Origin: Oikopleura dioica
Taxonomy: Eukaryota; Animalia; Chordata
NCBI GenBank assembly: GCA_907165135.1
Contig: OU015567.1
Location: forward strand, 11,656,001-11,720,000
Length of the DNA stretch: 64,000 nt
Direction of reading: 5' to 3'
Shown here: piece after piece, positions 1,562-60,600 of the stretch
How the letters are laid out: each line of letters starts with the position of its first letter
How positions within the stretch are numbered: the first letter of the stretch is position 1
Program-made: the position numbers and the translations under genes
Notes under the pieces: model-generated
What the model was told of the DNA's origin: nothing
The model's database searches: none
What the model saw: the letters and a program-made list of their open reading frames with translations, nothing else

Positions 1562-4500
1562 TTTTTCTGATTTCTGTTTGAGTTACTCTTCGAGTACAAT
1601 TCTGTATTGTTCGTTTGAAAAATATATTATGATTGCGTGAAGATCTTGCGCGGGGTGTATTATTTCGCGCAGAGTGCGCTGCGCGGGGCACCCCCAGCGC
1701 GCCATCCACGAGCAGGCGCTAAGGTGCGATCTCCAACCAGCGGCTTTTGAGCTTTTCGTTCATCTGATGGTCAAGTTGCGAGGCGGCTGGCCACCTGCTG
1801 CGTGTAGATGGGGACTCTAAGAATCGGTAGCAAGGTTAATTATTGATACGGAACAAGATGGCAACAGGACAAGGTGGTTTTCTACGAACAGGTCGATAGA
1901 ATTCAACTGCAGGAAGTTTCAGTCTGCCTTGAAGCTTGTCTTCTCTTCCAAATTGTAGATATATATTCAGGATCCTTTATTTTGAGGAAGAAAAAGTAGC
2001 GTTTTAAATGAAAAGAAACGGGCTTTGAAATTAAAATGGGTTCTTCTCTACCTTTTACGGCATAAAAACAGACGAAAGAAGAAAACAACGGTATCAATAA
2101 AAACTTTCGACCTTGTTATTCTGCTCTTCTCAAAAGAAACGTCGGGATAAACAAAAACTGCAGAGATCAAGGTACCTTGTCACCGATTCAAGCCGCGTAA
2201 ATATTTATCCCTGTCAATTTGACCTAGTTTAACTCCAATAAATGATTGATACTATCATCGCGCGGCCGATTGAATCCGTCTGATAGTCCCTTTTTATTGA
2301 AAAAAGAAGTGGGTCCTAAGTGCAAATTGCGGGCTAAAGAGTCGCTAATCTCTATTGAGAATCCACAGACTCTTGAAAGACAAACAGTGAGTGCCAGAAA
2401 AGAGGATGAGAAAGTGACGTATCAGACAGTTAGGCGGGAATAAATCATTCAAAAGTGAGCTCCTGTGTATTCATCAGAACACTGAAACACTTACTTTGCG
2501 CTTCTGGGACAACGCTAGGCCACTTGACCTGCTCACGGGCCAGCCGACGAGCTGAATTTCGCGACAGTTAGCTACTTGACTCTTCCCAGATGCTCGTCAA
2601 GTGTATAGCTTTTTTCGTTAGTTGAGGGGAAAGCGTCTTTTCCACCTGACAAAAGCCTGTGACCTCTTCTGAGTCAACCATCCATGAATTGATTCCCCAA
2701 AAAAGAGGATGATAAGCTCCAGCACTAAATAACTAAACGGATCTATTGAAGCCTAAAGTCCCCGTTTTGCGAACAAACAGCTTATAAAAATACTCTCCAA
2801 AGAAAAGTTTTAATTCAAAAAGACTTTGAAAAGAAAGTATCGCTTCTTTATTTTCTCAGAAAACATATAAAACACGATTCTTGCTGTTTCAATCAATGGC
2901 TCACGGAGTGTTCAGCAAATTTTGTAATGATAAGGTCAGTTACTTCAAATTTTCCGCCACCCGGTAGTGCCAAGAATTGTATTTTTACGATGGAATTTAT
3001 GCCTCCCGGAAGGCTGCAAAAAGGCCATGTTGTCTATTCAAGCGCGTGAAATCTTCCCTCCTGTAGAAAATTGCTGATGGACTGGAAATCTAGTTGAGTA
3101 ATACAATTTTCCATATTCTTGGTATTTTTGCATGAGAAGACAAAAACAAGGGCTCCTAATCATTGATTAGATCGACTCCCAGGGATTGAAACAGACGCTG
3201 AAAAATGTCTTATCAGAAGATGATATGAAGCAGCTTCAGTCACAAACTGATTCCGATGCGACAAAACTTGAGCATTTAAAAGAGCCCACCCGCGGGCTGG
3301 CATTTCCTCCTCTTTTCCCATACTAATATGCATTTTCTGATGAATAGGATCATTTCGCAATTGTCGTTGATTGAGAGGACTCCAAGGACAACTGGAAGAT
3401 GTGGTACCGCCAATGTCCAAATGCCAAACATCGATTGTCCACGCGCCGCGTTTGATGCATTTTCAATTTTAATTTTAACTTGAATAGAGAATGAAATAAA
3501 AACTCAAAGGCATATACCCTCCTTTTCAAGTCTGTATTGATTATATTATCTTTTTTGATGGCTGTGTTCCATGTTATCGTTAAAAAAAAAGAATAATTGA
3601 TCTGGTGATCAAATGATCGAAAACAAGGCATTTGCACGCAACCTCACTTGTCCCCAGATTCTAGGAAAATTATTGCCATAATAGACATTTAGCATTGATA
3701 ACTTATCAACACAAGGGGAATTGAAGTTCCGCCTCGCCAATTTGGTCTCAAACATTTTCGATTTTTGTGTGATATTTTGAGCATATTTTCAAAACAATTT
3801 TAGTTTGTTAAGATCCATCTGCTCAACTAAATACATGGATGTTATCACTGACGCATTTTTAAAATAAACAGTTGGGATTTAAAAACGCCCTAAACACAAC
3901 ATAAGAAAACATAAATATCATTTTCGTTCTCAGAAAATCGTTTAGAGGCCTAGGCCTTTTTGGAATGGAGATTTGACAGGGCGGAAGAAATCTTCGACTC
4001 CTGCTGGGAAACTATTTGTTTGGAAAAAAATCCTTTGGCAATTTGAGAGCTCTGACGGGGGGCTGACTTTATGCCAACTCAGAACGCGCAAGGAGTGATC
4101 TAAAGGACCGCTTCCTGAAAAACTCCTTTGAGCGGGTGCCAACGAAAGGTCAATTAGAAGACATAAAAGACTCACTCGCACGCTTTCGCTCTTGAATCAT
4201 GATTATTTAGATAAAGAAATAAAATAATATAAATTTGCCTTTTTAACTTGTTGACAGACGAAAGATTATTCACACTTAGAAAGTTCCCATCAAAGTGCGC
4301 CTAAGTCGCCATAAATAGTGGTACAGGTGCTAAACACATACAGCTCAATACTCTCAGAGAGGCATCAAGTTGAGCTGGAAAAACGGGATCAAAAAGGGCA
4401 GGGAAACAAAATGACAGCTGAGGAGTTTTCTAATGGATTGTATAAACAGAAACCTTTCATAAGTTATTTACGTGAGGAAATTGAATCCAAACGGAATAAA

Positions 4501-5507
4501 TTTCAAAAGAAAATGCTCTTCAACTTCGGCTTCAAAAATGGGCTAAGTTTTTCCATAATTATGATAGCAAAAGCCATGCGCTTATTTTTGTTGGGCTGAT
4601 CTTATAATTTGCACCCTCTGTAGCCTGTTGGTACGTTGTGATTGAGAGCTAAGGATATGATGCGGAAATTTGCGGATTATCCGCCAGTTGGGCTATTGAT
4701 TGTTTATTGCGAGCATCGGAAATGAAGGATTTGCCTATTCTAACGCCACATGTGTCCAGTACCCGTAACGGGTTAAATCCGTTTTTCCTCGGCCTTGAAT
4801 ATCCAGTTGACCAGCGCACGGGAATACAAGAAAATCCGGAACGAGCGTGAAATTAGCCCATGATCACGCGGAAAAGAGGGATGAAATTGATGGGAAAGAT
4901 CCGAAATCGATATAGTCATCCTTATTATGTCTTTTGGAATTTTAGGTTTTAGCGACAAGCCGACCCTGAGCTCACTGATGTGGACGGAACAGGTGCGCGC
5001 CGCTCGATTTTCCTTTCATTTTTTAAATTCCAGTTCCATTCGCCTCAGAATATTTTAGCATGAAATTAAAATCATGTCTTTTTTGATAGTTTCTTCGATA
5101 AAAATACATATTTTTACAGGGCTAAGTGACCTAGCTAAATTCATTGAACTATTCTCTCAATGCTCGAGTAGTACCAAATTGCTCTTTGATCGAGAACATT
5201 TTTTGAAAGGATCAAAAAGCCCTTCGTCTCAGATAAAAGCTCAAGGTTGTCACGGATCAATTCCTCCTTTCTCCCCCTCTTGACCGGAAATTGTCTTTCG
5301 TCGAGAAAAACCGCTTTGCGCAATTTTGAAATTGACTCTTTTTTGTCCGGTCAATTGTTTTTGAGGAAATATTGCGCTGTTTGATTTCAGCGAAGACGGA
5401 TCACTTTCTTGAAGATTAAGATACTTCAAAGGCTATTTAATAATTATCAATCACAATCTCCAACAAACTTATTTCAAATAAGTTATTTGAAGCTTTATTC
5501 AATTGAA

Positions 5508-7002
5508 CTAAACATAGCATTTTTCAGCGTTGATAGAAATCGGCGGCTCCAAAACACCATCGGCGACTTCTGGATTCGGTGAGTCTTGGAAGTAGTGGTA
5601 CTCTTCAAACTCCCTTAATCTCATTAGCAAAAGAATTTGTATAAGATAACAACCTGTAAAGAACATTCTCAAATGTCAATCCTGTGATAGGATACTCAGG
5701 AGTCCCAATAAAACAGCCAGCTTGTCTGAACCCTCTTCCTTGCAAATTTCTCATGGTTATATCATAAAACTCCGCGATGCTCGTTTCGTTTCTTTCATTT
5801 GACGATGAATAATAAATCGTCGACATCTTCACCGGTCCATTACAATTTCGGAAAGTCAAGTCTTCAAAAGTGATGTTGAAGACTTTTCCGCCTCGACCAA
5901 TAGAGCTCTTGAAGTCAATCCCTGCATCAAACAACTCGTCAGAGTCGAAGTTTCCAAAGACACAGTTTCTAACTACAATATCCTTTTCCCGCGCTTGAAA
6001 GAAATTCCTTTTGAAATCAAGGAAGAACTCCATGATCAACAACCCTTTCAAACCCTGCCTGAACACCACCGCTCATTTCGCTCCCAACAGCAAAGTTTTC
6101 ATTAATAAAGACTGAATTTTCCACGAGCACATTTTTCGTTGGCATACCAAATTCTCTACCACAGTAGTCAAAGCCGCTCTAAAATTTGTTCTTTGAATGA
6201 TCAAAATCTTTATTGCCTTTAGCGCAATAACATCATCTCCAACATCAACGAATACATCGTGGATATGAACATTTGAGGTGCTATCAATGTCGATTCCATC
6301 GGTATTTCGGCTGAAACCTTGGAATCATAGAATAGATTCTTTCCAACCTGTTGTGCTGAGCGAGAATGGCAACATCAGAAATCTCGATATTCTCAGAGTA
6401 AACAAAATGAATCGTCCAAAAGGGTGAATCCTTCCATGTGAGCTTTTCGATCTTGACATTTTTGCATTCAAGACATTGAAAAAGCCTTGGCCGTTCGAAC
6501 TTCAAGGTTTCCGAATTCCTCGTCCACCAATTTACGCCTTCTCCATTTATGACTCCTTTGCCCGTGAAGAATACGTTTTCAACTTGCGAGCCGTAGAAAA
6601 CCGAGCGGTAAAGTCCACTCTTGCTCGCTGCTAGTCCATCTCTTGCGATGCAATAGCTCGGTAGAGTCGGCATGACCTGATAATCATCTTCGTTTTCTGA
6701 TGCAATTATCTCACAACCCTTAGGGAAATGATAAGTTCTTGAAGCAATTTATAAATAGGTTCAGAAAGTGATCCAGCTTACGTATTTGTGGAAAGTGTTA
6801 GCGATGCAATTTTCATTTTTTCGGCTGGAAAATTTACGACGAGATGTGCGTGTGGATCTTGTTCTGCGCATTCTTTGATCTGAGTACTCAAGAACGATGT
6901 CAATTCAACAGGTGGTAGAATCTCTGTTGGGAGAATTAGGTCGCATGTTTGTGTGACTTTAGAGTTAATCACTCCTAAGAAGAGGAAAATTAAAGAGTTC
7001 AT
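5508..7002 (-). CDS. Secreted glycoside hydrolase family 28 (polygalacturonase-like, pectin-lyase fold), 6 exons
   Basis: Hydrophobic N-terminus MNSLIFLFLGVINS. The spliced reading gives GKGVINGEGVNWW, ERPRLF, DSPFWTIHF, RNTDGIDID, VGDDVIALK|SGFDYCGREFGMPTK, AVGSEMSGGVQ|DIVVRN and GIDFKSSIGRGG, all typical GH28 motifs. Introns at about 6739-6781, 6311-6347, 6179-6216 (GC-AG), 5983-6058 (GC-AG) and 5614-5653. Stop TAG at 5510-5508. Confidence 0.9.
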
Positions 7003-7203
7003 CGTGCATTTGATTCCCTTGGAATATGAATAAGTTTTCTCGTGAGTAGGAACATGTGTTGCTATCGCAAGCATCTCCCCTCCCACTCTTTGCTTCTTTA
7101 TTCTCTACCTGCAATAACGAAAGAAAACTTAATTTTATATAGTTCTATTTTATTCATTCCAATAACGCGGGCGTTTGACGAGTATGATTTGACAGTTGAA
7201 AAG

Positions 7204-8282
7204 CTACTCGTGGATCTTGATCATCGTTCCCTCGTAGAACCATTGTCGGCAGTGTGGACAACGCCCTCTTTCGTCCTCGTCATCATCGTTGTAGATAATT
7301 TGCTCGAGGCATCTCCTGCAAGCAACATGACCGCATCCTCTCAGCACCATCTTGTTCTTGAACCAGTCATCGCCGTACTCTTCCATGCACACCCGGCATT
7401 TTTTGCCTATAATAATGGCCACATCTAACTATTCTCTATTTTACATTATCGTACCTGCGTTCTCGTTTTCGTCCGCCTTGTATTCTTGGCAGCTGACGCC
7501 GTAGTATTCGTAAGAAACCTGCTTGTACCGTTTCGCGACGAATTGCAACTTTTCGTCTTTCTGCTTCAAGATTTCCTCTGTCTTTTCCTGAACTTTCTTC
7601 GTCTCCGCGATTTCCTTGTCCGTTTCTTGGATTGTCTTTGAGATTTCCCTGATCGTCTTCTTTCGATAGACCTGAGAATTCTCTATCTCCTCGATCTTCT
7701 TCTTTTTATCATCCAATTTGTTTTTCGCTTTTGTTTTCTCTCCTTTAGCTTGGACATGGAATTCCCTGATGACGGCAAGCTTCTTTCTCTGGGCTTAAAT
7801 TCACATAAAATCATTTGAAGAGTATAAAAAGTTACCTTTTTCATTCGTTGTTAGCCACTTGGAGGCCTTTTCGCAACATGATCCGAGAAAGAATTCACGA
7901 AATGAGATCTTCCTCGATTTGCAGCTTCCGGTTTCGGTAAACGATGGACATTTGAACTCGGCATCGGACTTCTCAAATTTGTAAAAAAGAGTTGTTTTGC
8001 TTATGCTATGCTTCGTTTTCGCACACTTTTCGCAGAACCTCTCGTTGCCTATTTTGACCGTTTCTGATGGTACCCTGAATAAAGGAATAAAATTATTTAG
8101 TCAACAAAGGTCTAAAAATCGTACCCGTCGCAGTCAGATCCTTGGCACATCCCAAACTGACCGTAGGAAGTGATCGCACCAGGAAAGATCTCCTCGAATT
8201 CGTTCAGCTTTTTTTCTGTTCTCGCTCTCTTGGGTGTCGTATTGGGAACATCGTCATGGGTTGACCGGGATCGAAGCTTCAT
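7204..8282 (-). CDS. RING-finger protein (N-terminal Cys-rich region, coiled coil, C-terminal C3HC4 RING); putative E3 ligase
   Basis: C-terminal CRVC...CGHVACRRC...CPHC, Lys/Glu-rich coiled coil (ORF 7441-7716), Cys-rich exons upstream (CQGSDC, CEKC, CPSF, CCEK). ATG at 8282 follows a TTTCTAG acceptor. Confidence 0.8.
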
Positions 8283-45668: not shown

Positions 45669-48600
45669 GAAATACTTGTCGCTGGTTCTGGCGATGTACG
45701 CGATCAAGCTCAAGTCAGACACCGAGAACCAGCGTTGTATCAACGATCACGTGGGTCACAACACGAAATCATGGCCCGACATCGACTGTCTCACGGAGCC
45801 GGACATGTGCCGTACGAGAGAGACAGAAGTGCCCGAGGAATGCGACATTTTCTGCTGCAACGAACAAGACGTCGATTTCATCTGCCACGCTGTTGCTTAT
45901 TCGATGAGCAAGGGAATGTGCAGAATGTACGGCTTCAGGATGGAGGATTATGATCAAGTGGCGAAGGAGCGCGGCCTTGTCGCGAAGAATGGAAAAGGAG
46001 ATGACTGGATGTATTTTTACAGAAAATGGGACAGTCAGCTCCATGACATTATCAATTTAACGATGAAAGAGGAGAGCGAAGACATCAAGACTTTCATGCG
46101 GCTCGATTGGATGGATGTCTACAAGGCCGATTGCTACATCGTTGATTTTGAAGGTGAAAACATGGAGGAGAAAAAAGTTATCCCGAACATCATGTCGAGC
46201 GAAATTGAATTCAACACGAGAATTCTGCCTTATAATTCTCGGTTGAATATGTCAATTACGGCTGGAAACGACAAAACTAACAGTGCTCCTCACATTGTGG
46301 AACTTTTGACCCGCCCTCCTCCGATTGACAACCTGACCATCATCGCCTCAGACGTGGATGTTGATTACTCGTGGAAAACTGTGGAAGGCTCTGAATCATT
46401 CACGATCAAAGTCATCGAGCTAGAAACAGGTGCTGAAATTGCAGCATCTCAGGAGACAAAAGACTTCAATTTCAACCACGCTGTCAAGCCAGTTACTGGA
46501 TATCAAATATTCATCCACTCAAACGCGATCGACTTCTACGGCAATGCAACGGAGGGTACAACTCGCGAAATGACATTCTATTCCGAGTTCCCCAAGATTA
46601 AAAAAGTCAGCATCGATGCTGTTGATTGTGACGAAGTGAGATTTTCGTGGGAAGATGTCGGCTACGGCGCAAAATACAAAGTACAAGTCTACGACCTCGA
46701 CAATGGGCAAAGCGTTTTCCTTGAAGATGTTGATGGAACAAATGCACGAGTCACCGGTCTTGAGAACGCAAGAAAGTACCAAACAATCGTTTACGCTTTT
46801 GATGAAAACACGAGAGGTGATCCAGCGGAGATAGTTTTTATCAGTGAACTCTGCAAGGCTGAGGATCTCTTCTCACCGAACCAAGAAGATACTGCTTTCG
46901 AACTATCTTGGAACCCAGTAGTACTCGCTCAAAAATACAAGATCAAGATCGAACCCTCTCCTGCCGATGGTCTCACGAGTAGATATGTTCAATCAGCTGC
47001 AGCTTACATCGAAGCTCTCACTCCCGGAATTCAATACAAAGTCTCGATCACTGCGATCATGAAACGAACCGACAAAGTTGAAATTATCTCAAAAGAGGCG
47101 CTTCTTTTCCAATATACAAAACTTCTTGCTCCAGAAGATCTCTGCATCCCAAATAAGAACCTTCATAATTCAAGTGCTACGCTCACGTGGACGATTATGG
47201 AAGGCGCTGATCTTTACTACCTGGCCCTCGCTACCTGTCGACCCGTGAACAACTTTCTCATTCGCCCCGGATTCTACCGCTCTAAGGGGCAAAACTGCCC
47301 CAGATGGCGATCAGAAGGGGTGAAAAAATGCGAAATAAAATCGGACTGGGACCAAGGATCAAAATATCTGATGCAGAATATTTCCAAAAATGCGGTAGAC
47401 AAGCACGAGCAAATTTTTCAGCTGACGGCGGATAGCAAAATGACACTAGACGGACTTGAGCCAGGAACAATCTACATGTTCTGGCTTGGAGGAGTCAACA
47501 AACAAACTTATTCGGAAAGAGCGGAAATGACCTTTATCACTCGATTGAAGACAACTGAACTGGCTGAGTTCTTCGATGTAACGCATGATTCTGTGAAGGT
47601 AAAATGGAAACTGGTTAACAAAGCGGACAGATACTCAATCATCGTCACCCACGATATTGCAAGACGAAAGCGAGTCCAGCGATTGACGACCAAATCCGAC
47701 TCAACGGACATAATTGATCTTCATCCAAACTCTCCGTATCTCATAGAAGTCATTGCCGAGAACAAAATCTCTTTTTCGTGGCCGTTTCCACTAAAAATGC
47801 GAACAAAACTGGCGCCGACAAAGATTCTCTCTCCTTTCAAACCACCACGAGGAGATGAAACCGGTGACGATTATTTTGACATTCAATGGACACCAGTAGA
47901 AGGCGCTGAAAGCTACGAAATCGAAATAACTGATGACCTGGATCATGATAGAAAGCGCCGAGAAGGAGATCATAGTTCTGATCGACCACCTTTCCATCTG
48001 ACTCACCGAGTCCGACCAAAGAATCTCGAAGAGCATCAGTTCTTTGCTGCGGGCATGAATCATAATACTGAGCATGAAATAAAGATCACAGCTCACAATC
48101 GTTTCACGGATGGATCAGTTACGACCGAGCGCTTCTTCACTCGGCCGCACACTCCCGAAAACTTCCGAACTGTCGAAGTCTACGATGATCTTGTCAGAGT
48201 TGCGTGGGACGCCTGCGAGGGAATTTGGGATTATGACATCAATGTCTACGATGACAATAATCACGTGGCGAAGGTCGTTCTTCATAACAAAACTGAACAT
48301 GAATTTAAAGAGTTGATTCCCAACCATCATTATATTTTCGTCATCCGTGCTTATGGGCACGTCGTTTCTCATCCGGCAACGATCAAGATCTTCACAAAGA
48401 TCCAAGGAGTCGATTATTTAACGATGACAGAAGTTTACGATGATACAATGAAATTGGATTGGAAAGAAGCGAATGGAGCGAGCCATTATCTTGTGTATTT
48501 CAGCCATCAAGAAGACCCCGAAGAACGCGTTGAACGAACAGAAACAAGTGACGTGACTCTGACGGATCTGACACCAAATTCGATTTACACCATCAAAGTC

Positions 48601-51600
48601 GTCGGTATGAATGCAAATACAGAGGGAATGCCAATGTTCACGACTGTTATTACAAAACTTGGATATATCAAGAAACTGCGTCAGGACATACCGGCGTCGA
48701 CGGATAAAACAATAATGATGCGCTGGCTTCAAGTTCCCAATGCGGATCATTTCATCCTGAAAGTCACAAGCAAACGGACAAACAAGCGTATCCAAGTGCA
48801 CAAGATTCCTGCAAAGGACTCTTCTCTTCTCATTCGCGATCTTCGACCGGCAACTATCTATGTGATCGAGATTCAGGCGTTTTCTGATATTTCTGACTCC
48901 TATCCTACGGATTTCAGCCCGCAAACTAAAATCACGCCAATCAAGGGATTCTCTGTTGATTTCACCTCAGACATCCTTCTTCGATTGATCTGGAATTCAT
49001 TCACTGATAACACCTATCACATCGCAGGAGACGGAAGATACTGGAAAATTGACACGAATGACTTCCAATGGATCCCCGACTTGGTCGCCGATACAAATTA
49101 CAACTTCACAATTTGGGCAACCAAGGACATCTACTACTCTGACAACACGACTCTCACTGCTCTGACGCACATGTCCGCACCGACTGTAAATGTCGACTCA
49201 CGGACTCATACAGTGATCAAAATCAGCTGGACACAAGTACCTCGTGCAGACCAATATCGTATTCAATACGTCGACACGCCGACATTCAAAAAAATCGTCG
49301 ATTCTGGCCGCGAGAAGACTTTCCGAATGCGCTATCTTCTCTCTGAAGATCAAAATATCAGAGTTCGAAATCTCGATCCGTACACTGAATATCTTTTCTT
49401 TGTCCGAGCAGAACGGGGTCAGCAAATTGGTGAGAATGGAACTGTCACTGATTACACCAGACTTTCACCAACTCAAGCGATTGAAATCAAGTCAAGAACA
49501 GATAAGACCTCCCAGTTGAGTTGGGCCTCTGTTAACGGAGCAAAAGGGTACACGATTAAATACCAAGCCCAAGAGCCCGTTCAAAATGAAGAACTTTCAA
49601 TTTATGTCGAGCAGACTAAAGAAAAGCTGGTCAATTTGCTCCCTGGATCGACCTACAAACTCGTCATCATTGCTGAAGCGCCAGAAACAAGTGGCCAGCC
49701 GGCAAACGATGAGTTCGACACCTTCCTTGAAGCTCCTGAGCAAGTCACTACAAAGATCTATGACACTTACACTAAAACAATCTGCTGGAACCCAGTTTTT
49801 ATGGCTGAAGGATACACGATGAATTACGCATCGATTGAGCCAGAAGACAAAGTTTCTCGGGCAAAGGACTTTACCGATTTTGTAGAAGGAAGTGAGACCT
49901 GTGGATACATCGACGACCTTCTTCCGGGTTTAAAATATCAAATATCAATTTGGGGCTGGAATCAGCGATATGACGGAATGAAATCAAAATACAAGTCGGC
50001 GACATTGTTGGAAGCGCCGGAAGACTTTGAAGTGAATTTCTACAACAACACTCAAATTGAAGTGGTTTTTGCGCCCGTGACTCGTGCTCTTCGATACGAG
50101 CTGGCTCATGCAAAGATTAATTCTTCCGATTGGGTCATCGACGGAGAAACATCAGACCTCAAATTCCCCATCAACTCTCTGACTCCATTCACCGAATACG
50201 ACATAAAAATCAACCCGATCAACAAAGTCACTCGAGGTTACGAATCGAAACTGGCTCACTGGAGCAAGCTTAATCCAATTTCCAACTTCCAGCGAATAAA
50301 ACTGACTCCTAACCAAGTCACATTGAAATGGGATCCAGTCGAACACGCAGTAAAATACAGGGTTTTCTATGTCTCCGAAGTTTCTAATTTGACCCTCCAA
50401 GAAACTGATTATGCTGGAATCATCATCACTGGGCTTGAAGAAACAACTCTTTACAATATTTCCGTTGAACCAGTTGCTGAAAACGAAGTTCCCGGTGTAA
50501 TGACTCTTTATCCGGTCATTACTGAAGCAAAGACAGTTGAAGATCTAGTCATTGAAGACATCGAGCCCTGGCGAATGATTTTGACATGGACTGGAACTGA
50601 AAAAGCTATTGCTTACGAAGTGCACGTCAACTCGACTGAGTATTCCTACATCATGCGAGTTCGAACAAACCGCGCTTTTATCCGTCAATTAGAGCCTGGA
50701 ATCAAACAAAATTTCAAAGTCTATGTCATCACGAGAATCTCACGCTCTCAGCCCGTCCCCGTCGCTGGATTCACTACACTTCCTCTGCCGGATTCCGCTC
50801 GAGTTACCAAAATCACCCATTCGAAAGTCATGACAAAATGGAACGCTGCTCTAGAAGATTGGGCCCCGGCTTTCGACGATCTGTACTATCGATGTGTTTT
50901 GATCAAGGACTACTCAAACGAGACCGTGGTGAACACGACAACGACGGAACTTGGATTTGATTTCACGAATCTAGAGTTGAACACTCGATATACCATCATT
51001 CTCAGCTCCGAGAGTCCTGACACATCATCAGATGAGCGAATTATTGAAATCAGAACACTTTTGCCGGATTCACCAGATTTGGACATGAATGAAATCAACG
51101 ATGACAACGTTGTTTTGACATGGAATAAAACTGTTGGCTTGAACTACGCTGTCTATGTAAAACCCTTAACATGCCCGGCTGACAAAGTTGTTATTTGCGA
51201 CATCGCAGAGACGGAAAATGTCGTGGTGGAAGGACTTGTACCTGCTTGCCTCTATGATCTGGTCATTTATGGACAGATTTGTCCAAAAGATAGAAAACTG
51301 ACCATTGAAGATGATCGAAAACGAATCGCGAATCAGATGTTTTATACAAAACTCGAGTCTGTTACCGATATCGAAATCATAGAAGAGGATCGTATTGCCA
51401 ATTTCAGCTGGTCACGTGTCCCAGAAACAAGTTTTTATGTAATTCAGTGGACGTCGCCGGAACTAATTTCCGAAAATGTGACAAAAACCAGCGAAGATGA
51501 ACGAATAGTCGCACAAAATCTTCAGCCGAATACGCTTTACGAAGGATCCATTTGGGGAACAAATCCAGATACAAAGTCGAATCCTGCTCCATTCTCACTT

Positions 51601-54600
51601 CATACAAAAATGACAAGAGTAAATGCGACTTTGAGACAATCCGGGCCTGATTTCTTGGAATACGCATGGGACAAAGTAAACGGAGCAGAGCGATATGATT
51701 TCAATGGCATGCCTCAGTTCCCGGGAGAGGATCCTTTTGCTAAATCAACAACATCAACTTCAATCAAATTCGATCAACTCATTGATGGATCCTTATATCT
51801 CATTGAAGCAGAAGCTGTCAACGAAGACACAACATCTGTTCTTTCGCAGTATTACGTTTGGACACGTCTTTATGAGCCGGATGTTGTAATCTCAAATGTT
51901 GAGGACACTTCCCTCGTTCTCTCTGTAGAGCACGTCGATAAAGCGACCAGAATTGTCGGAAAAATAAACGATGCGCCAATAGACTTTCCATTGAACTCAA
52001 GTGAGAGTCGAACTGAAATCGTCCTAGATAACCTAGAACAAGGTTCAATGCAATCTGTGAAGATTCAAGCTGTCAATGATAACTGCACCTCCCATTTCGT
52101 CGAGAAAAATGTCATGCTCTTACTGACTACGCCAACGAATATAACTGTTCTTCCTTCAGCAGATTCAGTCACTCTCGAGTGGTCCGCGATTTCGAAAGCT
52201 TCGAATTATCTCCTCACCCTCACCGCAGAAAACGGAGAAGCAACTCAAATAGAAGTGAGGATTCCTCAGTATACCTTTTTTGGCTTATCAGCTGGAACGC
52301 TATACAAGATTACCATCCAAGCGGTCAATGAAGAGACAAAATCAGCAGAAGCGCTCATCGAAACCTACACTAGACTTGACACGCTTTCTCAAGTAGATCT
52401 GATTGAAATCGAACCGACAAGTCTGTCCCTCGAATGGAACACTGTCGACGGCGCAACTGGTTACGAAATTTCAGTCAAGCAGCATTATGATCAAAAATTG
52501 AATCTCACGGAATCTACTTTGCTTTTTCACACAACGAATAGCAGCTATCAAGTAACAGGACTTGTTCCTGGTGCAAAATACAGCTACTCAGTCGCTGGTA
52601 AAAATCTCAATACGCTTTCCGACGCAGAAGTTTTCACAATCTACACTGAGCTTGAAAATATTCCCGAAGTAGCAGCTGTTCAGGTTCACCATAATGACAT
52701 GACTGTTTCGTGGGGCTTTGTTCCGAACGCGGTGGAATATGTTGTTGAATTATCTGATAGCGCCGGACGACAAATTCACTCCGAAACTGTCCAAGCTCAA
52801 GAAACAGAATGGATCGCGAATTCGATCGAATTGAAAAATCTTCAGCCAGGTGCTTTTTACAACGTCAGTCTTCAAGCTTTCAATGATGTTACAAAATCTA
52901 ACGTTGCTGTGCTGAGCCACTACACCTTGCTTAACCCATTCAACCCCCGAGACGTGGTCATTTTCGAAAAGCGACCAGAAGGAATTGTTTTCTCTTGGCA
53001 ACCGATTGACGGCGCAGATTCATACAAAATTATAATTGATAAGGACTTTGAATTAACGTATTTCATGGACCGCGGTGAGGAAAACCCTCGCGAGCTCATC
53101 ACTAACGAGACTTCCTACGATGTCACCGATCTACTCCCCGATACGAAGTACAAATACGAATTGATCGCCTTCAATCAAAAGACATTCTCTGAGTCTTTCT
53201 ACGGCTACGAAGCGACTCTTTTGCCAGATATCGAGCTAGCCGAAATCGTTGAAAAAACTTACGCAAGTTTCAAGGCTCAATGGTCGAACGTTCCCGGGGC
53301 CGCAGATTATCTCGTTCAGCTGAGATATACAAACGGACAAGTCTTATTCTTGACGTCCTTGTTCAAGGCTGAAATTGACCTGCGATTCGGATCACTCTTA
53401 CCTGGCGTTTCGTACACTCTAAGTATCATCGGTCGAAATGAAATCACGGAGACAAGGTCAAAATCACTCTCTGTTTGGACTAAACTTTCTCCAATCATCA
53501 ACTTGAGAAGCAACGACGATGAGCTGCAAGAAGACAAAGTGGTTCTAGAGTGGGAAGATGTCCCCGGAACAGCCCACTACCACATTGTCGTTCTCGAAGT
53601 TGAAACAGATGTAGTTGTATTCACTGAGAACATCACCGAAAACAAGTATGAGAGAAGAAATCTCACGGCAGGGACTAAATACCAGTTCACGATCCATGCT
53701 GTAAACGAGTTTACCGAGTCCGACACTGAACAAATCGCTGTAGCAACACCTCTCTCGAAACCAACTGACTACCAAATCAGCGTATTCCACCCTTATCTCA
53801 TCAAAGGCTCATGGAAACTAGGAGATGCACTGGCTCCTCGGCACAGGCGAATCACCTGGCGATGCGGAACTGATGATCCAAAATACTGCGATTGTTCCGA
53901 CTTCGAGGGATGCCCTGGCCATTATGTTTTGAAAAAGATCCGGGCTGATGGAGAAAAATCTTGGACACCCGAAATGCTCGGCGGCGGAGACGTTATTGAG
54001 GATTCCATTCAATTGGACAATGACATGGTTTACAGAATGTGCATCCGTGCTGAAAACCCTCAGACTGGCGAGAATTCTCGGCCATTTTGCGTCACTCTTA
54101 AAACCGGAATGATCGCTCAAGAAGCTGCAGAAGACCAGAAGCTGTGCATCCAACGAGATGTCAACTGGATCAATCCGCTTGAGATGATTCCAGCGATTTT
54201 GAACAATGGCGAATGGACCTACGAGCAAACTCCTAAAGGAGTCATTCCAAGTTACAATGCCGACTTGACCGCAACGTGCAAGAAAATCGGAAAAGTATAC
54301 AGTTGGGACTTGAAAGATTTTATCCGAATTCATCAAAAATCTTGCTCACCAGGTTGGATAAGCATCGACAACGATTTCCCTGGAGTAGTTGTCCAATGCC
54401 TTTTCCCAAAACACAAGTCGGGCACGCCTATCTTTCCAAAATCAATGATCGAAGTCAACTACTGCGAAAAACGAAGCGTAGATCCGAAACGACCTTGGAT
54501 CGCGCTGAGAAACGTTGCTAACGGCGGTCGCTGCGGATGCCACTATCTTAAAGCTTGCGAAAGATGGGACTATAAGCCTTTCCCTGGCTTTACTGTCCGA

Positions 54601-57600
54601 AACGCAGCGCCGATTATAACGATGCCGCTTGTGAAAAATGAGCAGGCTTGCTTGAAAAAGTGCGACGTTCAACGAGAACGAGAATGCGCAAAGATTCCGC
54701 AAGTAGTAAAAGAGGGAAAGACAAATTGCGTCTGTAAGAACTGCTGTCTGATGACCACTTTGTCAACTGAAGACGGTTGCGTTCTCTTCACATCATCTCT
54801 GAATCGAACGTCGACGAGAATCGAAGCGAGGGATCAGACAACTGTCTTCACGAACTTCCTCGGCGCGCAAGGATCCCCCGGCTTCCGCCTCCTTGATTTC
54901 ACCAACAATGGGGTGGCAAGGCCGGAAATGGATTACGAAGTGACTTTGTCATTTTCCTACGCTTCCGAAACCTGTGTCAGAATAATATTCGATCAGAACA
55001 ACGTTACCGAAGCAGTTTATCATGACATCATCATTCGAAAAGGACGAGATTATTCGAAATCAAAACCCTGCATGGAGACATATCCAACATTGAGCTTCTA
55101 CCCGGTTGAGCACGTGATCGATTATGATCTGGAAGAAGGTGAAACAATCAAGATTGTTGAAACCTATTCTTACAGCGACTATGGCATTTATGACAGCATC
55201 GTTGAAATAACATCGACGGATGATGATCAAGCCGGTGATAATATCGTAAAAGACCAAATGATTCAAAAGAAAATCGGCATCAACCAGTTTGGCTGCCAAT
55301 ATCCAGCGATCAAGATCGAAGGCCCGTGGCTCGCGGACGAGACGAAAACAATTACGCTTCCGAAGTCGAAGAAATTGATTCTTTCGGCAACCAGTGACAT
55401 TCAATGCGAAGTGAATCCAGGCTACAGTTTCCGCTGGACAGCAAAACTGATTGGTTTCGACCATAGCTTCGACAACATGGTTATTGACGGAAACATGACT
55501 TTGGAAGATCACCTTGAGCTCATCGAAGAGTCTTCCGGAGATGTCGAAAATCTGGAAGGCTCTGGCAGTTACATCGAACTCGTTCTTGCTGAAAAACTTG
55601 AAGCTGCTCTGCAGCCACGTGATTTAATCGAAGGCTTGTGGAAAGTAACAATTGAACTGGAATTCAACGATTTGGACTTTTTGGTTGAAGACGTTGTCTG
55701 GATAAATGTCATTCCAAGTCCACTCGAAATCGACATTGAAGGTGGCGAAAAACGAACTGCTGGACATGGAAAAACCATTCAATTTAAAGCTGATGCAATT
55801 GATCCAGACGAGTCAAGCTCTGACCAAACCAAAGGAATTGAATTTGAGTGGTTTATTTTGGGTACAAACGCGACAGAAACAATCCCTATCGATGCATATT
55901 TTGAAGAGCTTTATGCAAATCAAAGCCTTTTGCCGTATCACTGGGAGGACAAACCAACTGAAGAGGGCAAATTTGATCTTTCAGACATGTATCAAATTCG
56001 ATCTAAATCCGAAGTCTGGATCAACACCGACTTCTTTTACATGAACGAGCCATTCAAAGTCATACTCGTCTGCAGCAAGGATATTCGAGAGGCGATTTTC
56101 GAGCAGACTGTTACGGCCGTTGCAGGTGATCCGCCAGATTTCTTCATCAAGTGTGTGGAAAACTGCAAGGATAAATTGAATCGAGGCGAAGTTCTTTCTC
56201 TTATGATAAAATGCAAAAATTGTGTTCGCGGAAGATCGCCTCGATTTTTCTGGAGCTTCAGTCTTTACGACCTTCCAGAGGAGGAAGAAGAGGATGAATA
56301 CTCTTCATATGATGAGCCCGATGAGCCAGGATCAGCAATCGTTGATGATGTTCCATCCATGACGGCAACGTTCAACCAGAGAATTATGAAAGTCCACAAG
56401 AACTATTTCTTGCCCGGGCGAGAGTATTCGATTGACGTTTCTGTATCTATGGACGGATACGACGAAGAACTCGACCAAATCGTTCGACAAGAGGCTTCCA
56501 ACCAAATTGTCCGAAAAGTGAACCTTCCACCAATTGATGGTCATTGCGTTGGAATCGGAGGCGAATCTACCTGCGATTACATTACCCAAGAGCAATATGA
56601 ACTGGTTCCAAATGAGAATGCCACGGTTATTTTTACCGAAGACATTCCGGAAGCAGAATGCTCAGAAGCCTGTTGTTTCGGTGAAGCAATCAACTGTCTT
56701 GGATATCAATTTACCGCAGCTATCAATGAAACGAATGGAAACTGCACCCTTTTCGATATTGCCGAGGACGATGAAAATGTTGAGCTTCTGTATGTTCCTG
56801 AGGATTCTTATTTCAGCCGATACAATCGCCGTGTTTTCGCAAAAGTAGAGGCGGTCAAAGGCGAAGTGAGTTTTCAATGCCAAGACTGGTTTGATGAAGG
56901 AACTTTTCTGAACTACGAGGAAGCTGCTGGTCGCCAGCCTCAGCTTATGTACCGATTTACGACAAAACCGATCAATGAATCAATTGATCCTTTCCTGCTC
57001 TACCACGGTCCGTCCCCTCAAACACCAAAACTCTCCCTCCCGCTCGGCAACAAAGACTTCTTCTTCTTTGGTCTCCGAGTTGTTGCTGAAATCTGCGATT
57101 TGTACGGAGAATGTGTTGACTCCAACGAAATCCTCGTCCAGTCCTTCCCAATGATCTCTGTCGACGTGGGCGGAGACTTGATGAACGCTGTTTCTGGAAA
57201 TAGCTCGAAATTGCTTACAGCAGTGAGCACTAAGAATCCGAAAATTGTGGCATCCATCACTGGCGCTGTTTCTAGCTATTTCATTCAAAACATTTCGGAT
57301 ATTTCGTCCGATACCTTGATCACAACAACCGCAGCTTTGACAACCGTGGCGGCCACAACAAGGCGATTGATTTTCGCAAACAACATGCCAACTCCAAATC
57401 CAATTGTCGAAGGACAGCCAGAAGAGCCACTGTTCGATCTTTCTCAAGTCGTCGCGAGACCAGTAGAAACTGATGGAATCGCAGCGGAAGAAGACTCAGA
57501 AGAAATCGCAAAACAAAAAGCTGAAGAAGCGGAACGAGTCCGTCAGTGGACACTTCAAATGGCTGCTGAGGCATCAAACTTCTTGTCATCCGGTTCTCTC

Positions 57601-60600
57601 GAAACGCAGAGCTCGCTTTCTCGAAGAAAAAGGCAAGTTCGAGATTTTATCCGAAAACGAGCAAGGCGATCTGCTGATTATTTCTACGACGAGTATCAAG
57701 GCGGGTCAGACAATTCATCCGATTATGAAATGTACGAATTCTCTGGAATTTCCGAACAGCTTTATGGACCGACTGAATCGCCAATTTATGTCACGACAAT
57801 GTCTGCTTATGAAAATGATTTGTCCTTGGAAGTCGAATCGTCCGTCAAAAAGGGGTTGAAGAAAGAACTGATGAACGCGATGGGAAGCATTGTCGATGTA
57901 ATTGTCTCGCCTGAGTCATTGATGCAAGTATCAGCAGCGGTTTCTACTTTCACTGAGACAGGAGATGATTTGGACGACGAAACGCAGCAAAAAGGCGCTG
58001 ATATGGCAGCGTCAATGACTTCCAATCTCAAAGGCTTCACTGAAGAAGCGAACAAAGAGCAACTGAGCAAGATCGGAGGAAAAGTCATGGCCAGTCTATC
58101 CGGTATCGTTTCCACTTCGACTCCAGACGATCAAGTGCTGAAAGAAGACAAGCTCGCCGGAAAAGAGCCGAATTTCGACCAAATGGAAAAGCGAGACATC
58201 AACCCGATAGAAAACGAATGGATGAGAAAACTCGCACGACTTGAAAATCGAAAGAACATTGCCGAAAAAGCGCCAGCAGCGAAAAATATCACCTCAAAGT
58301 CCCTTGGCTCTGTTTCTGACCTGACAGGAGCGTTGACTACCAAGCAGATGGGAGGTGAAGAAGCGACTGAGGTTGAGTCAGGAGATCTAAGCGTCAACAC
58401 TCAGAAAATCAGCGCAGAGGATGCTTCAGGAGCCCAACTGAGGAACAAAAATGGCGTTTCCATCAAACTCCCGGAAATATCCGAAGCGACTACAGCCGCG
58501 CTTCTCGAGCAGGGTCAAGAAGAACTCGATATTCAAATGTCGACTTTTGGCAAAAACCCGTTCAAATATGATGATAACGCTTCTCTAGTCAATTCTGCTG
58601 TCACTGTGTTAAACATGCCGAACGGAACTGATGATATTTTGAAATCTGGAATGGGTCTCGCGATCCCCAATGATTTCAGCGCAGATAATCAAATGATGGA
58701 ATTGCATTTCCCCGACGAGGGAGTTCTGCAAGTCTCTCGTTTCGAAATCGTCGGCCCCGGTAATGCCATTCTGATGGTTTACGAGCCCCCACATCTGGAA
58801 GACACAACTGTTCATTATGAAGTGTTCATTAGAAACGGATCTGCGCCGGTTTTAGGATCAACTCCAGATGAGCATATTTTCGATTTCAAATTCTCTTTGC
58901 CTTTGAATCTTGAAATCTGGGAGATGGAAAATCCTGCGATCGACAAATACAAAGTTTTCATCCCAGAGAATGACATCGAATGCGAAGTTTATCCTTGCAG
59001 TTGGTTCGTTGGAAGCATGTACACTACATCCAACATGACTACGCCGCAACAAAATCGACGAAAACGACGATCACCTGATCTTCCTGACACGACGCACCAT
59101 CTTTTCCTCTCCACACCAGGCTGCAGAGTGCTCAATCAAGAAACCGGAAAATGGTCAAGCAACGGCTGCCATGTCGACTCTCGATCAACGCCAGAATACA
59201 CCGAGTGCTTCTGCAAGGATCTCCCTCAAAAAGCCATTTTCTCTGCTGAATTCTTCGTCCCTCCCAACAAAATTGACTTTTCCACAATTTGGTCAAAATT
59301 CTGCATAACATGCAATGCTGGAGTTTTCAGCTTCGTCATTGTTTTCCTTGCTCTTTGGCTGATCGCAGCTTGGTTTATTTTGAAAATGGACAAGAACGAT
59401 GCCATCAAGTGGGCTTTGCGAAGTCTCATTGACAATCGACGAGAAGACAAGGTACTGTATCAGATTTCTGTAACAACCGGTGGCGGAGGCGACTCATCAA
59501 CAAAGTCCAAAATCTATTTCCGTCTGGAAGGCATGCGAAAACGATCTAGAGTTCGAAGGTTAGGCACAACTAAAAACGCTCAGTTATTTGAGCGCGGTAC
59601 TAATAAGCATTTCCTCATGCGAGAAGCAGTTGACCTTGGCGAACTAAAAGCTCTTCAAATATGGCACGATAATTCCGGACGGGGAGCTTTGAAAGGCTGG
59701 TACTGCCAACAAGTTGTCGTCACTCATGTTCAAAGCAACAAACGCTGGTTCTTCATGATTCAAGATTATCTAGATGCGGCACGATCCGATGGCAAATGCG
59801 AGCGACTCGTCCCCCCAGCTGATCCCGATGAGAAGCAAAACTTCAACAAGCTCTTTGCCGCCACAAGTTGGTCGAAACTCTCCGATGATCATATCTGGCT
59901 CTCGACTTTTCATCGACCAACTAAATCTATCTTCAAGCGAATGGAACGTTGGTCTTGTTGTGCTTGTTTAACCTTTATTACCATGCTCACGAACATGATG
60001 TTCGCTGGACAAGAAGATAGCTCAGAAATGATCAGAATCGGTCCTTTCCGGTTCTCACCGAGCGCGATCTACATTTCCGCCATTTGCTCCCTCATCGTTG
60101 TTCCTGCTACGCTCATTCCGATCACCCTTTTCAAAAAAAGAAAGTCAAAAGCAAACGATGGCACAGATAACCGAGCAAAGGGTTTCCTACCTTGGTGGTC
60201 AAAATACGTTGCTTATGGGCTCAATTTTTGCGTAACAATCATCTGCGCCTTCTTTGTGATTCTTTACTCAATGGATTTTGGAAAGGCAAAATCTGACAAG
60301 TGGCTTCTCAACGAACTCATGTCCTTCTGTGTTAATATCGTTGTAGCTGAACCAATCAAGGTCGTTTTGATCAGTATGTTCATCGCTTCGATCCTCCGAA
60401 AGCTCGATCAATCGTTCTTGGACCTAATTGAAAACACGGAAATCGAGCAAGAAGACAAGCGATTCTTGGATCTGTGCTGTATCGAAGACGACTCTGGAGA
60501 AGCTCCTCTGATTACTCCCGCGCCACCAAATGAAAATGACCTGAACGCGGCGAAAGAATTGAGATACAAAGAAGAAAAAATGGTCGAAATCATTTGGGAC

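What the first reader, a model, noticed from the sequence alone, without database searches (positions are those of the whole stretch)
5508..7002. Intron-bearing GH28 polygalacturonase in an apparent chordate: candidate domesticated horizontal transfer
Seen: a complete secreted GH28 gene with NTD and GDD catalytic motifs and the SGxDxxG..FGMPT / GSEMSGG signature of bacterial- and plant-type exo-polygalacturonases. It is split by five host-style mini-introns (two GC-AG) and sits between ordinary animal genes, so contamination is unlikely. Known: GH28 is generally absent from chordates and was acquired horizontally in some insects, nematodes and rotifers; tunicates already carry a horizontally acquired cellulose synthase. 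Inference: a role in digesting algal or pectin-like polysaccharides, or in remodelling the larvacean polysaccharide house.
Basis: partly seen in the sequence, partly recalled or inferred. Interest (0 to 1): 0.78.

Follow-up and report, generated by a model that had tools for sequence, protein, structure and literature searches.

The report
Protist-type GH28 pectinase-like gene in Oikopleura
A small planktonic relative of vertebrates carries a working, intron-bearing gene for a pectin-cutting type of enzyme. Its nearest relatives are in protists and plants, not animals, so it was probably picked up from a microbial eukaryote long ago.

Summary
Window 7002..5508 (minus strand) is a complete six-exon gene for a 419-residue GH28 glycoside hydrolase. 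It has an N-terminal hydrophobic leader, the NTD and GDD catalytic aspartates, GSEMSGG, and a poly(A) signal.

It is host DNA. The introns are 37-76 nt, codon use is host-like, and an animal RING-finger gene lies 200 nt upstream. That linkage is repeated on an independent metagenome contig. Three other diverged Oikopleura-like lineages carry the gene. Against the one full-length copy, dN/dS is 0.046. One intron is GC-AG here, GT-AG in a second lineage and exactly absent in two others.

The nearest relatives are 37-44% identical and eukaryotic, not bacterial. They form a plant/protist "probable polygalacturonase" subfamily found in Fabomonas, Andalucia, Gefionella, Difflugia, Ploeotia, the choanoflagellate Salpingoeca urceolata and land plants. 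The split from bacteria is fully supported. The position inside the eukaryotic clade is unstable because the branch is very long.

Transfer from a microbial eukaryote is the best reading (about 0.6). Ancient vertical descent with many losses is only marginally rejected (AU p 0.038). The joined protein was neither searched nor folded. No paper in the library mentions this gene.

The parts
6782..7002 (-). Exon 1: ATG 7002-7000, hydrophobic N-terminal leader, and the diverged first coils. Fast-evolving: 49% identical in L088.
6738..6781 (-). Intron 1, 44 nt, GT-AG, phase 2. Kept in L001 and L088.
6348..6737 (-). Exon 2: LPSYC motif, NGEGVNWW, RPRLFQC, SPFWTIH. PF00295 profile positions 50-135.
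6311..6347 (-). Intron 2, 37 nt, GT-AG, phase 2. Kept in L001, L087 and L088.
6217..6310 (-). Exon 3: NTD (Asp208, 6300-6298) and GDD (Asp229/Asp230, 6237-6232), then VIALK.
6179..6216 (-). Intron 3, 38 nt, GC-AG, phase 0. GT-AG in L001; exactly absent in L087 and L088.
6059..6178 (-). Exon 4: SGFDYCGREFGMPT and GSEMSGG (6085-6065), then VQ.
5983..6058 (-). Intron 4, 76 nt, GC-AG in the homology-favoured model (alternative GT donor at 6064). It has an internal stem pairing +6..+14 with -11..-19, kept with compensatory changes in four lineages.
5654..5982 (-). Exon 5: GIDFK (Asp298 in place of the RIK arginine, 5916-5914; Lys300, 5910-5908), GRGG, and N-glycosylation sequons. No amino-acid change against L001 over 109 codons.
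5614..5653 (-). Intron 5, 40 nt, GT-AG, phase 2. Kept in L001.
5508..5613 (-). Exon 6: C-terminal 34 residues and the stop codon TAG (5510-5508).
5494..5499 (-). AATAAA poly(A) signal 9 nt after the stop codon, kept in L001.

Best explanation
Window 7002..5508 (minus strand) is a functional nuclear gene of an Oikopleura dioica-type larvacean. It encodes a 419-residue, probably secreted, inverting glycoside hydrolase of family GH28, of the exo-polygalacturonase-like kind (GSEMSGG instead of GHG).

Shown:
- Gene structure, family membership and retention of the catalytic Asp208, Asp229/Asp230 and Lys300.
- Residence in host DNA.
- Conservation under strong purifying selection in several diverged lineages.
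- Membership of a eukaryotic (protist and plant) GH28 subfamily rather than any bacterial group.

Inferred:
- The gene entered the larvacean lineage by horizontal transfer from a microbial eukaryote, plausibly ingested prey, before the O. dioica lineages split.
- It was then domesticated: it gained host mini-introns, a poly(A) signal and host codon use.
- It evolved fast, as Oikopleura genes do.

Most likely role (inferred): a secreted digestive enzyme that removes uronic-acid residues from acidic, pectin-like polysaccharides of ingested algae. Its substrate contacts may have changed, because the arginine of the RIK motif is an aspartate here.
For: Structure and family.

Catalytic residues against 77 homologues and against PDB polygalacturonases.

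Host residence:
- A RING-finger gene ends 200 nt upstream on the same strand. Its C-terminus also precedes the gene on the independent contig L001.
- GC3 is 0.42 against 0.47 for a host ORF. The RSCU correlation is 0.50 with the host and -0.06 and -0.26 with the nearest relatives' genes.
- Mini-introns include a non-GT class typical of O. dioica (PMC7072748).

Functionality:
- dN/dS is 0.046 at dS 0.55. There are no frameshifts, and exons 3 and 5 have no amino-acid change.
- A fourth lineage, at 72% nucleotide identity, keeps the first 55 residues of exon 5 100% identical.

Eukaryotic affinity:
- HMMER over 1.84 billion representatives finds only Oikopleura-like fragments above 43% identity.
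- The labelled nearest relatives are Fabomonas, Gefionella, Difflugia, Ploeotia, Andalucia, Salpingoeca, MMETSP sequences and plants.
- The best bacterial matches are 25-34% identical over the longer matches; two matches of about 50 residues reach 40-46%.
- Bacteria split off with SH-aLRT 100 in two taxon samplings.
- The LPSY motif is shared with 58 of 60 eukaryotic homologues, while bacteria have TRWEG.

Against vertical descent:
- Holding Oikopleura with the choanoflagellate costs 30.3 lnL, AU p 0.038.
- No intron position is shared with Selaginella.
Against: - The eukaryotic subfamily spans many supergroups and includes a choanoflagellate, so ancient presence in the animal stem lineage is possible. 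The AU rejection is only marginal.
- The Oikopleura branch is very long (2.2-2.4 changes per site), and its neighbours change with taxon sampling. No donor can be named.
- Absence from other tunicates and animals was not shown exhaustively. Only about 40 of the relatives could be labelled.
- No expression data were available.
- The organism's name comes from intron features and earlier AI notes, not from a named sequence match. My attempt to get one failed.
- The Arg-to-Asp change at the RIK motif, not seen in any of 77 homologues, leaves the substrate uncertain.
Confidence: 0.6

Rival explanations
1. Ancient eukaryotic GH28, present in the holozoan ancestor, was inherited vertically. It is kept in larvaceans (and in the choanoflagellate S. 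urceolata) but lost in the other animal lineages sampled.
For: - The subfamily occurs across eukaryotic supergroups, including a choanoflagellate.
- Oikopleura nests inside this eukaryotic clade.
- The internal topology is poorly resolved, and the long branch could hide a true sister relationship.
- AU p 0.038 is not well below 0.05.
Against: - The free tree never places Oikopleura with Salpingoeca, and forcing it costs 30 lnL.
- No other animal sequence was seen among the labelled relatives.
- It would require many independent losses across Metazoa, including other chordates.
Confidence: 0.22
2. Direct transfer from a bacterium, as for stick-insect pectinases or tunicate cellulose synthase.
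For: The GSEMSGG exo-polygalacturonase signature is shared with bacterial enzymes such as Thermotoga 3JUR. NCBIfam bacterial models match weakly.
Against: - Bacteria separate from Oikopleura plus eukaryotes with SH-aLRT 100 in both trees.
- Bacterial identity is 25-34% over the longer matches, against 36-44% for eukaryotes.
- Oikopleura has the eukaryotic LPSY motif, not the bacterial TRWEG.
Confidence: 0.04
3. Contaminant or assembly chimaera: algal or protist DNA joined to host sequence.
For: Larvaceans eat microalgae, and the closest relatives are marine protists.
Against: - Host-type mini-introns, including non-GT ones.
- Host codon use, unlike the GC-rich relatives.
- The RING-finger-to-GH28 linkage is reproduced on an independent metagenome contig.
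- The gene is present in four diverged Oikopleura-like lineages.
Confidence: 0.01
4. A resident gene whose product no longer cleaves pectin-like substrates. It may be a neofunctionalised hydrolase or binding protein acting on the animal's own extracellular matrix (the house), not on food.
For: - Asp replaces the RIK arginine that contacts the substrate carboxylate in classical polygalacturonases. This residue is seen in none of 77 homologues.
- The N-terminal PF12708 motif has been lost.
- Constraint on exons 3-5 is very strong.
Against: - All three catalytic aspartates, the lysine and GSEMSGG are retained.
- The RIK arginine position is variable in this subfamily anyway (His, Tyr, Lys or Asn in about 45% of the eukaryotic members).
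- No expression or localisation data exist.
Confidence: 0.13

Closest known systems
Plant and protist 'probable polygalacturonase' GH28 subfamily (PF12708 + PF00295; e.g. Selaginella, Physcomitrium, Andalucia godoyi ANDGO_08222)
   Same: - Best overall similarity: 37-44% identity over about 300 residues.
- Shares LPSY[GC], NTDGID, GDDxIAxKSG, the CGxxFGxPT region, GSEMSGG and KxxxGRGG.
- A signal-peptide-like N-terminus.
- Falls in the same clade in both trees.
   Different: - Very long branch.
- The N-terminal DFGAxGDG/PF12708 motif is not detectable.
- The RIK-position residue is Asp.
- Intron positions are not shared with Selaginella.
- The host is an animal.
Bacterial exo-poly-alpha-D-galacturonosidases (Thermotoga maritima 3JUR, Yersinia 2UVE)
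   Same: GSEMSGGV, the SG-D--GR--G-P region and the catalytic aspartates align.
   Different: - Lower identity.
- The bacterial TRWEG motif stands in place of LPSY.
- Separated in trees with full support.
Horizontally acquired GH28 polygalacturonases of beetles, mirid bugs, stick insects and root-knot nematodes
   Same: An animal carrying a GH28 gene absent from its close relatives, integrated and intron-bearing (literature: PMC4876471, PMC4943190, PMC3511272, found).
   Different: According to those papers, those genes are fungal- or bacterial-type enzymes in terrestrial herbivores. This one is a protist/plant-type exo-like subfamily in a marine filter-feeding chordate. I did not align those sequences here.
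Tunicate CesA and GH6 genes (horizontally acquired carbohydrate-active genes)
   Same: A precedent for foreign carbohydrate-active genes domesticated in tunicates (PMC7464555, PMC10334666).
   Different: - A different enzyme family.
- Those have bacterial donors and are shared by all tunicates.
- The GH28 has so far been seen only in Oikopleura-like sequences.

Membership tests
Glycoside hydrolase family 28 (Pfam PF00295) | Profile match above Pfam's gathering score, colinear along the protein | tested here: met
   Exon 2 scores 48.5 bits and exon 3 scores 25.9 bits (cut-off 22.9). Exon 5 scores 22.4 bits. Profile positions 50-135, 139-168 and 215-304 are in order.
Glycoside hydrolase family 28 (Pfam PF00295) | Three catalytic aspartates (NTD and G-D-D) | tested here: met
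   Asp208 and Asp229/Asp230 align with invariant columns in 77 homologues and with ADPG2 and PehA.
Glycoside hydrolase family 28 (Pfam PF00295) | R-I-K substrate-binding motif | tested here: inconclusive
   Lys300 is kept. The arginine is Asp298 (GIDFK aligned to GVRIK of 7B7A and 7B8B). This position is variable in the subfamily (Arg in 33 of 60 eukaryotic homologues), but Asp is seen nowhere else.
Glycoside hydrolase family 28 (Pfam PF00295) | Right-handed parallel beta-helix fold | not tested
Glycoside hydrolase family 28 (Pfam PF00295) | Hydrolysis of alpha-1,4-galacturonosyl or related linkages | not testable with these tools
   Needs a recombinant enzyme assay.
Eukaryotic exo-polygalacturonase-like GH28 subfamily | GSEMSGG in place of G/QHG, and the LPSY[GC]xxR[DE] motif | tested here: met
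   GSEMSGG at residues 267-273 and LPSYCIARD from residue 99. LPSY is present in 58 of 60 eukaryotic members, and the bacterial homologues lack it (TRWEG instead).
Eukaryotic exo-polygalacturonase-like GH28 subfamily | N-terminal PF12708 (pectate_lyase_3) coil with DFGAxGDG | tested here: not met
   Exon 1 has no Pfam hit at E up to 1. The region is positionally equivalent but diverged.
Horizontally transferred gene in an animal | Physical integration next to bona fide host genes | tested here: met
   (RING-finger linkage, repeated on the independent contig L001).
Horizontally transferred gene in an animal | Well-supported nesting within a non-animal clade | tested here: inconclusive
   The gene falls inside the eukaryotic clade with SH-aLRT 100 against bacteria. 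Its sister group is unstable, and union with the choanoflagellate gives AU p 0.038.
Horizontally transferred gene in an animal | Absence from sister animal lineages | tested here: inconclusive
   No animal was seen among the roughly 40 proteins I looked up or among the source-named hits (all plants or protists). No direct survey of tunicate or other animal genomes was possible.
Horizontally transferred gene in an animal | Expression in the host | not testable with these tools
dN/dS of 0.046 is indirect support only.

The most novel reading that the evidence does not exclude
The enzyme is not digestive. It is secreted by the house-building epithelium and trims an acidic polysaccharide of the larvacean house. 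That would make it a second foreign carbohydrate-active gene, after cellulose synthase, co-opted for a tunicate-specific extracellular structure. Its unique Arg-to-Asp change would reflect a new, non-pectic substrate.
Probability: 0.12. Interest if true: 0.8.

Novelty: new member of a known kind. Interest (0 to 1): 0.55.

Why it matters
GH28 enzymes in animals are so far a story of terrestrial plant feeders that took genes from bacteria and fungi. This one is in a chordate, in the sea, and its relatives are protist and plant enzymes. It therefore points either to eukaryote-to-animal transfer, perhaps from prey, or to an old eukaryotic digestive enzyme that almost all animals lost.

It gives a concrete, testable candidate for how larvaceans, major grazers in the ocean carbon cycle, break down algal acidic polysaccharides.

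The lineage-to-lineage differences in its introns (present or absent, GT or GC) also make it a small natural experiment on intron gain in a foreign gene.

Tried and rejected
1. An alternative splice model for intron 4 (GT donor inside GCAGG|GT, acceptor AAAAG|G). Rejected because that acceptor is not AG in L001.
2. The GT donor 6 nt upstream of the favoured intron-4 donor. Not rejected. It would delete Val-Gln, which no homologue lacks (0 gaps in 60 eukaryotic sequences). However, L088 reads TT at the favoured site.
3. A word-index search with exon 2. It found only two clusters of Oikopleura-like fragments because of the length filter.
4. Naming the organism through the 5412-residue neighbouring ORF. 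Nothing at E 1e-20, so the search was wasted.
5. An ESM Atlas look-up of exon 2. It gave only generic GH28 clusters.
6. Rfam and folding on the conserved block downstream. Nothing found.
7. Shared intron positions with Selaginella. None found.
8. Literature searches for Oikopleura or tunicates with GH28 or polygalacturonase. No relevant paper.
10. The joined protein was not sent to any search or fold tool. In local scripts the exon translations were placed in one alignment row with X at the three split codons.

Full report
**What is there.** Reading the minus strand of window 5400-7100 in three frames gives a gene that starts at ATG 7002 and stops at TAG 5510-5508.
- The six exons are 7002-6782, 6737-6348, 6310-6217, 6178-6059, 5982-5654 and 5613-5508. 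They sum to 1260 nt, or 419 codons plus the stop.
- The five introns are 44, 37, 38, 76 and 40 nt.
- Searched exon by exon, Pfam Glyco_hydro_28 matches exons 2, 3 and 5 in colinear order. Exons 2 and 3 each pass the gathering score alone. NCBIfam polygalacturonase and rhamnogalacturonidase models match weakly.
- There is no second copy in the window.
- AATAAA lies 9 nt after the stop codon.

**The gene model is confirmed by comparison.** ORF fragments 87-98% identical to exon 2 exist only on short marine metagenome contigs.
- Contig L001 (2346 bp, 87% nucleotide identity) spans the whole gene. All exons stay in frame, and the only exonic indel is 3 nt. Exons are 85-92% identical and introns 58-84%.
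- dS is 0.55, dN is 0.025, and dN/dS is 0.046. Exons 3 and 5 have no amino-acid change.
- Two further lineages, L087 and L088 (about 70-72% nucleotide identity to the window and 85% to each other), also carry the gene.
- Intron 3 is GC-AG in the window, GT-AG in L001 and exactly absent in L087 and L088. This fixes its borders and shows intron turnover inside the host lineage.
- Intron 4 starts GC, GC, GA and TT in the four lineages at the homology-favoured site. A GT 6 nt upstream is common to all. Using that GT would delete Val-Gln, which none of the 60 eukaryotic homologues lacks. The exact donor needs RNA data.
- Intron 4 also has a stem (+6..+14 paired with -11..-19), kept in register with compensatory changes. 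This fits earlier notes of this scan on non-GT introns.

**It is host DNA.**
- The window carries RING-finger, lipin, LON-substrate-binding and guanylate-cyclase domains.
- The RING-finger ORF ends 200 nt upstream of the GH28 ATG on the same strand. L001 begins with the last 34 residues of the same RING protein (79% identical) in the same arrangement.
- GC3 (0.42) and codon preferences resemble a 5412-codon host ORF (r = 0.50). They do not resemble the GC-rich genes of the nearest relatives (r = -0.06 and -0.26).
- Mini-introns and frequent non-GT donors are a hallmark of Oikopleura dioica (PMC7072748). Earlier notes of the scan also call this genome O. dioica. I could not confirm the name with a labelled sequence.

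**Active site.** I aligned the protein with 60 eukaryotic and 17 bacterial homologues and with solved polygalacturonases.
- Asn206-Thr207-Asp208, Gly228-Asp229-Asp230, GSEMSGG (267-273), Lys300 and Arg305-Gly-Gly are all kept.
- The arginine of the classical R-I-K motif is Asp298. This position varies in the subfamily (Arg 33, His 10, Tyr 6, Lys 4 and others among the 60 eukaryotic homologues), but Asp occurs in no other sequence.
- The N-terminal PF12708 motif of the subfamily is not detectable in exon 1.

**Relatives.**
- HMMER with exon 2 against 1.84 billion representatives gave one hit above 1e-30, an Oikopleura-like fragment. All the rest are at or below 48% identity, and at or below 43% for matches spanning most of the exon.
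- Summing per-exon BLAST scores, the best full-length relatives are 37-44% identical.
- Those that carry labels are eukaryotes: Fabomonas, Gefionella, Difflugia, Ploeotia, Andalucia, Salpingoeca urceolata, an MMETSP transcript, Psilotum and many land plants annotated "probable polygalacturonase". Others sit on marine metatranscriptome or eukaryotic contigs.
- A scan of 185,579 prokaryotic genomes gave at best 25-34% identity over the longer matches; two matches of about 50 residues reached 40-46%.
- In trees of 79 and 46 sequences (LG+C20 PMSF), bacteria separate from all eukaryotes plus Oikopleura with SH-aLRT 100.
- The Oikopleura pair sits on a branch of 2.2-2.4 changes per site, and its neighbours change with sampling.
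- The LPSY motif (58 of 60 eukaryotes; bacteria have TRWEG) is shared by Oikopleura.

**Origin.** Two readings remain.
- Transfer from a microbial eukaryote needs one gain.
- Vertical descent needs an ancestral holozoan gene, which the choanoflagellate copy makes conceivable, plus losses in essentially all other animals.
- Forcing Oikopleura with Salpingoeca costs 30.3 lnL, AU p 0.038. This is a marginal rejection, and it is made under a long branch.
- No intron position is shared with Selaginella. That fits intron gain after arrival, but Oikopleura reshuffles introns anyway.
- I put transfer at about 0.6 and vertical descent at about 0.2.
- A bacterial donor and contamination are effectively excluded.

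**Function.**
- Shown: an intact GH28 catalytic apparatus under strong constraint.
- Inferred: secretion, from the hydrophobic N-terminus kept in three lineages and the N-x-S/T sequons.
- Inferred: an inverting mechanism, with Asp229 and Asp208 activating water and Asp230 as the acid, by analogy with characterised GH28 enzymes.
- Inferred: exo-type action, from the GSEMSGG class.
- Inferred: a digestive role on acidic algal polysaccharides. Many subfamily members belong to phagotrophic protists, which suits a digestive role.
- The Asp298 substitution may mean a changed substrate. A role in the house is possible but has no evidence.

**Limits.**
- The joined search and the fold of the joined protein were left out.
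- In local scripts the exon translations were combined in one alignment row with X at the split codons.
- Only about 40 relatives could be labelled taxonomically.
- No paper in the library mentions a GH28 in Oikopleura or tunicates.

Noticed in passing
window 5226-5440: A block just downstream of the GH28 poly(A) signal is 212/215 identical to contig L001, although synonymous sites of the gene differ by dS 0.55 and introns are 58-84% identical. It has no Rfam match, no folding signal (z = -0.11) and is single copy in the window. It contains an inverted repeat, TTGACCGG...CCGGTCAA. Unexplained conserved non-coding element.
   Followed up: partly
window 5983-6058 (intron 4) and its counterparts in L001, L087 and L088: A 7-9 bp stem pairs intron positions +6..+14 with -11..-19. 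It is kept in the same register in four lineages, with compensatory changes (G10-C becomes C10-G). The donor dinucleotide at that site reads GC, GC, GA and TT. This fits earlier scan notes on stem-closed non-GT introns.
   Followed up: partly
window 6179-6216 (intron 3): Presence/absence and GC/GT polymorphism of one intron among Oikopleura-like lineages: GC-AG here, GT-AG in L001, and exactly absent in L087 and L088.
   Followed up: yes
window 7204-7716 and 7002: A RING-finger and coiled-coil gene ends 200 nt upstream of the GH28 start on the same strand. The two could form an operon-like pair, as is common in Oikopleura. Not tested.
   Followed up: no
window 45676-61914: A single uninterrupted ORF of 5412 codons. 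Residues 4700-5200 found no relative at E 1e-20 among proteins of 2977-9471 residues.
   Followed up: partly
L083 (NCBI GCA_977009605.1 contig, gene 3001-4350): In the 79-sequence tree one of the three unresolved neighbour groups of the Oikopleura pair (P0042; SH-aLRT 85, flagged as a possible long-branch join). It is an intronless GH28 gene on a eukaryotic contig, two genes downstream of a Rho-GDI gene, with GC3 of 0.59. The organism is unknown.
   Followed up: no
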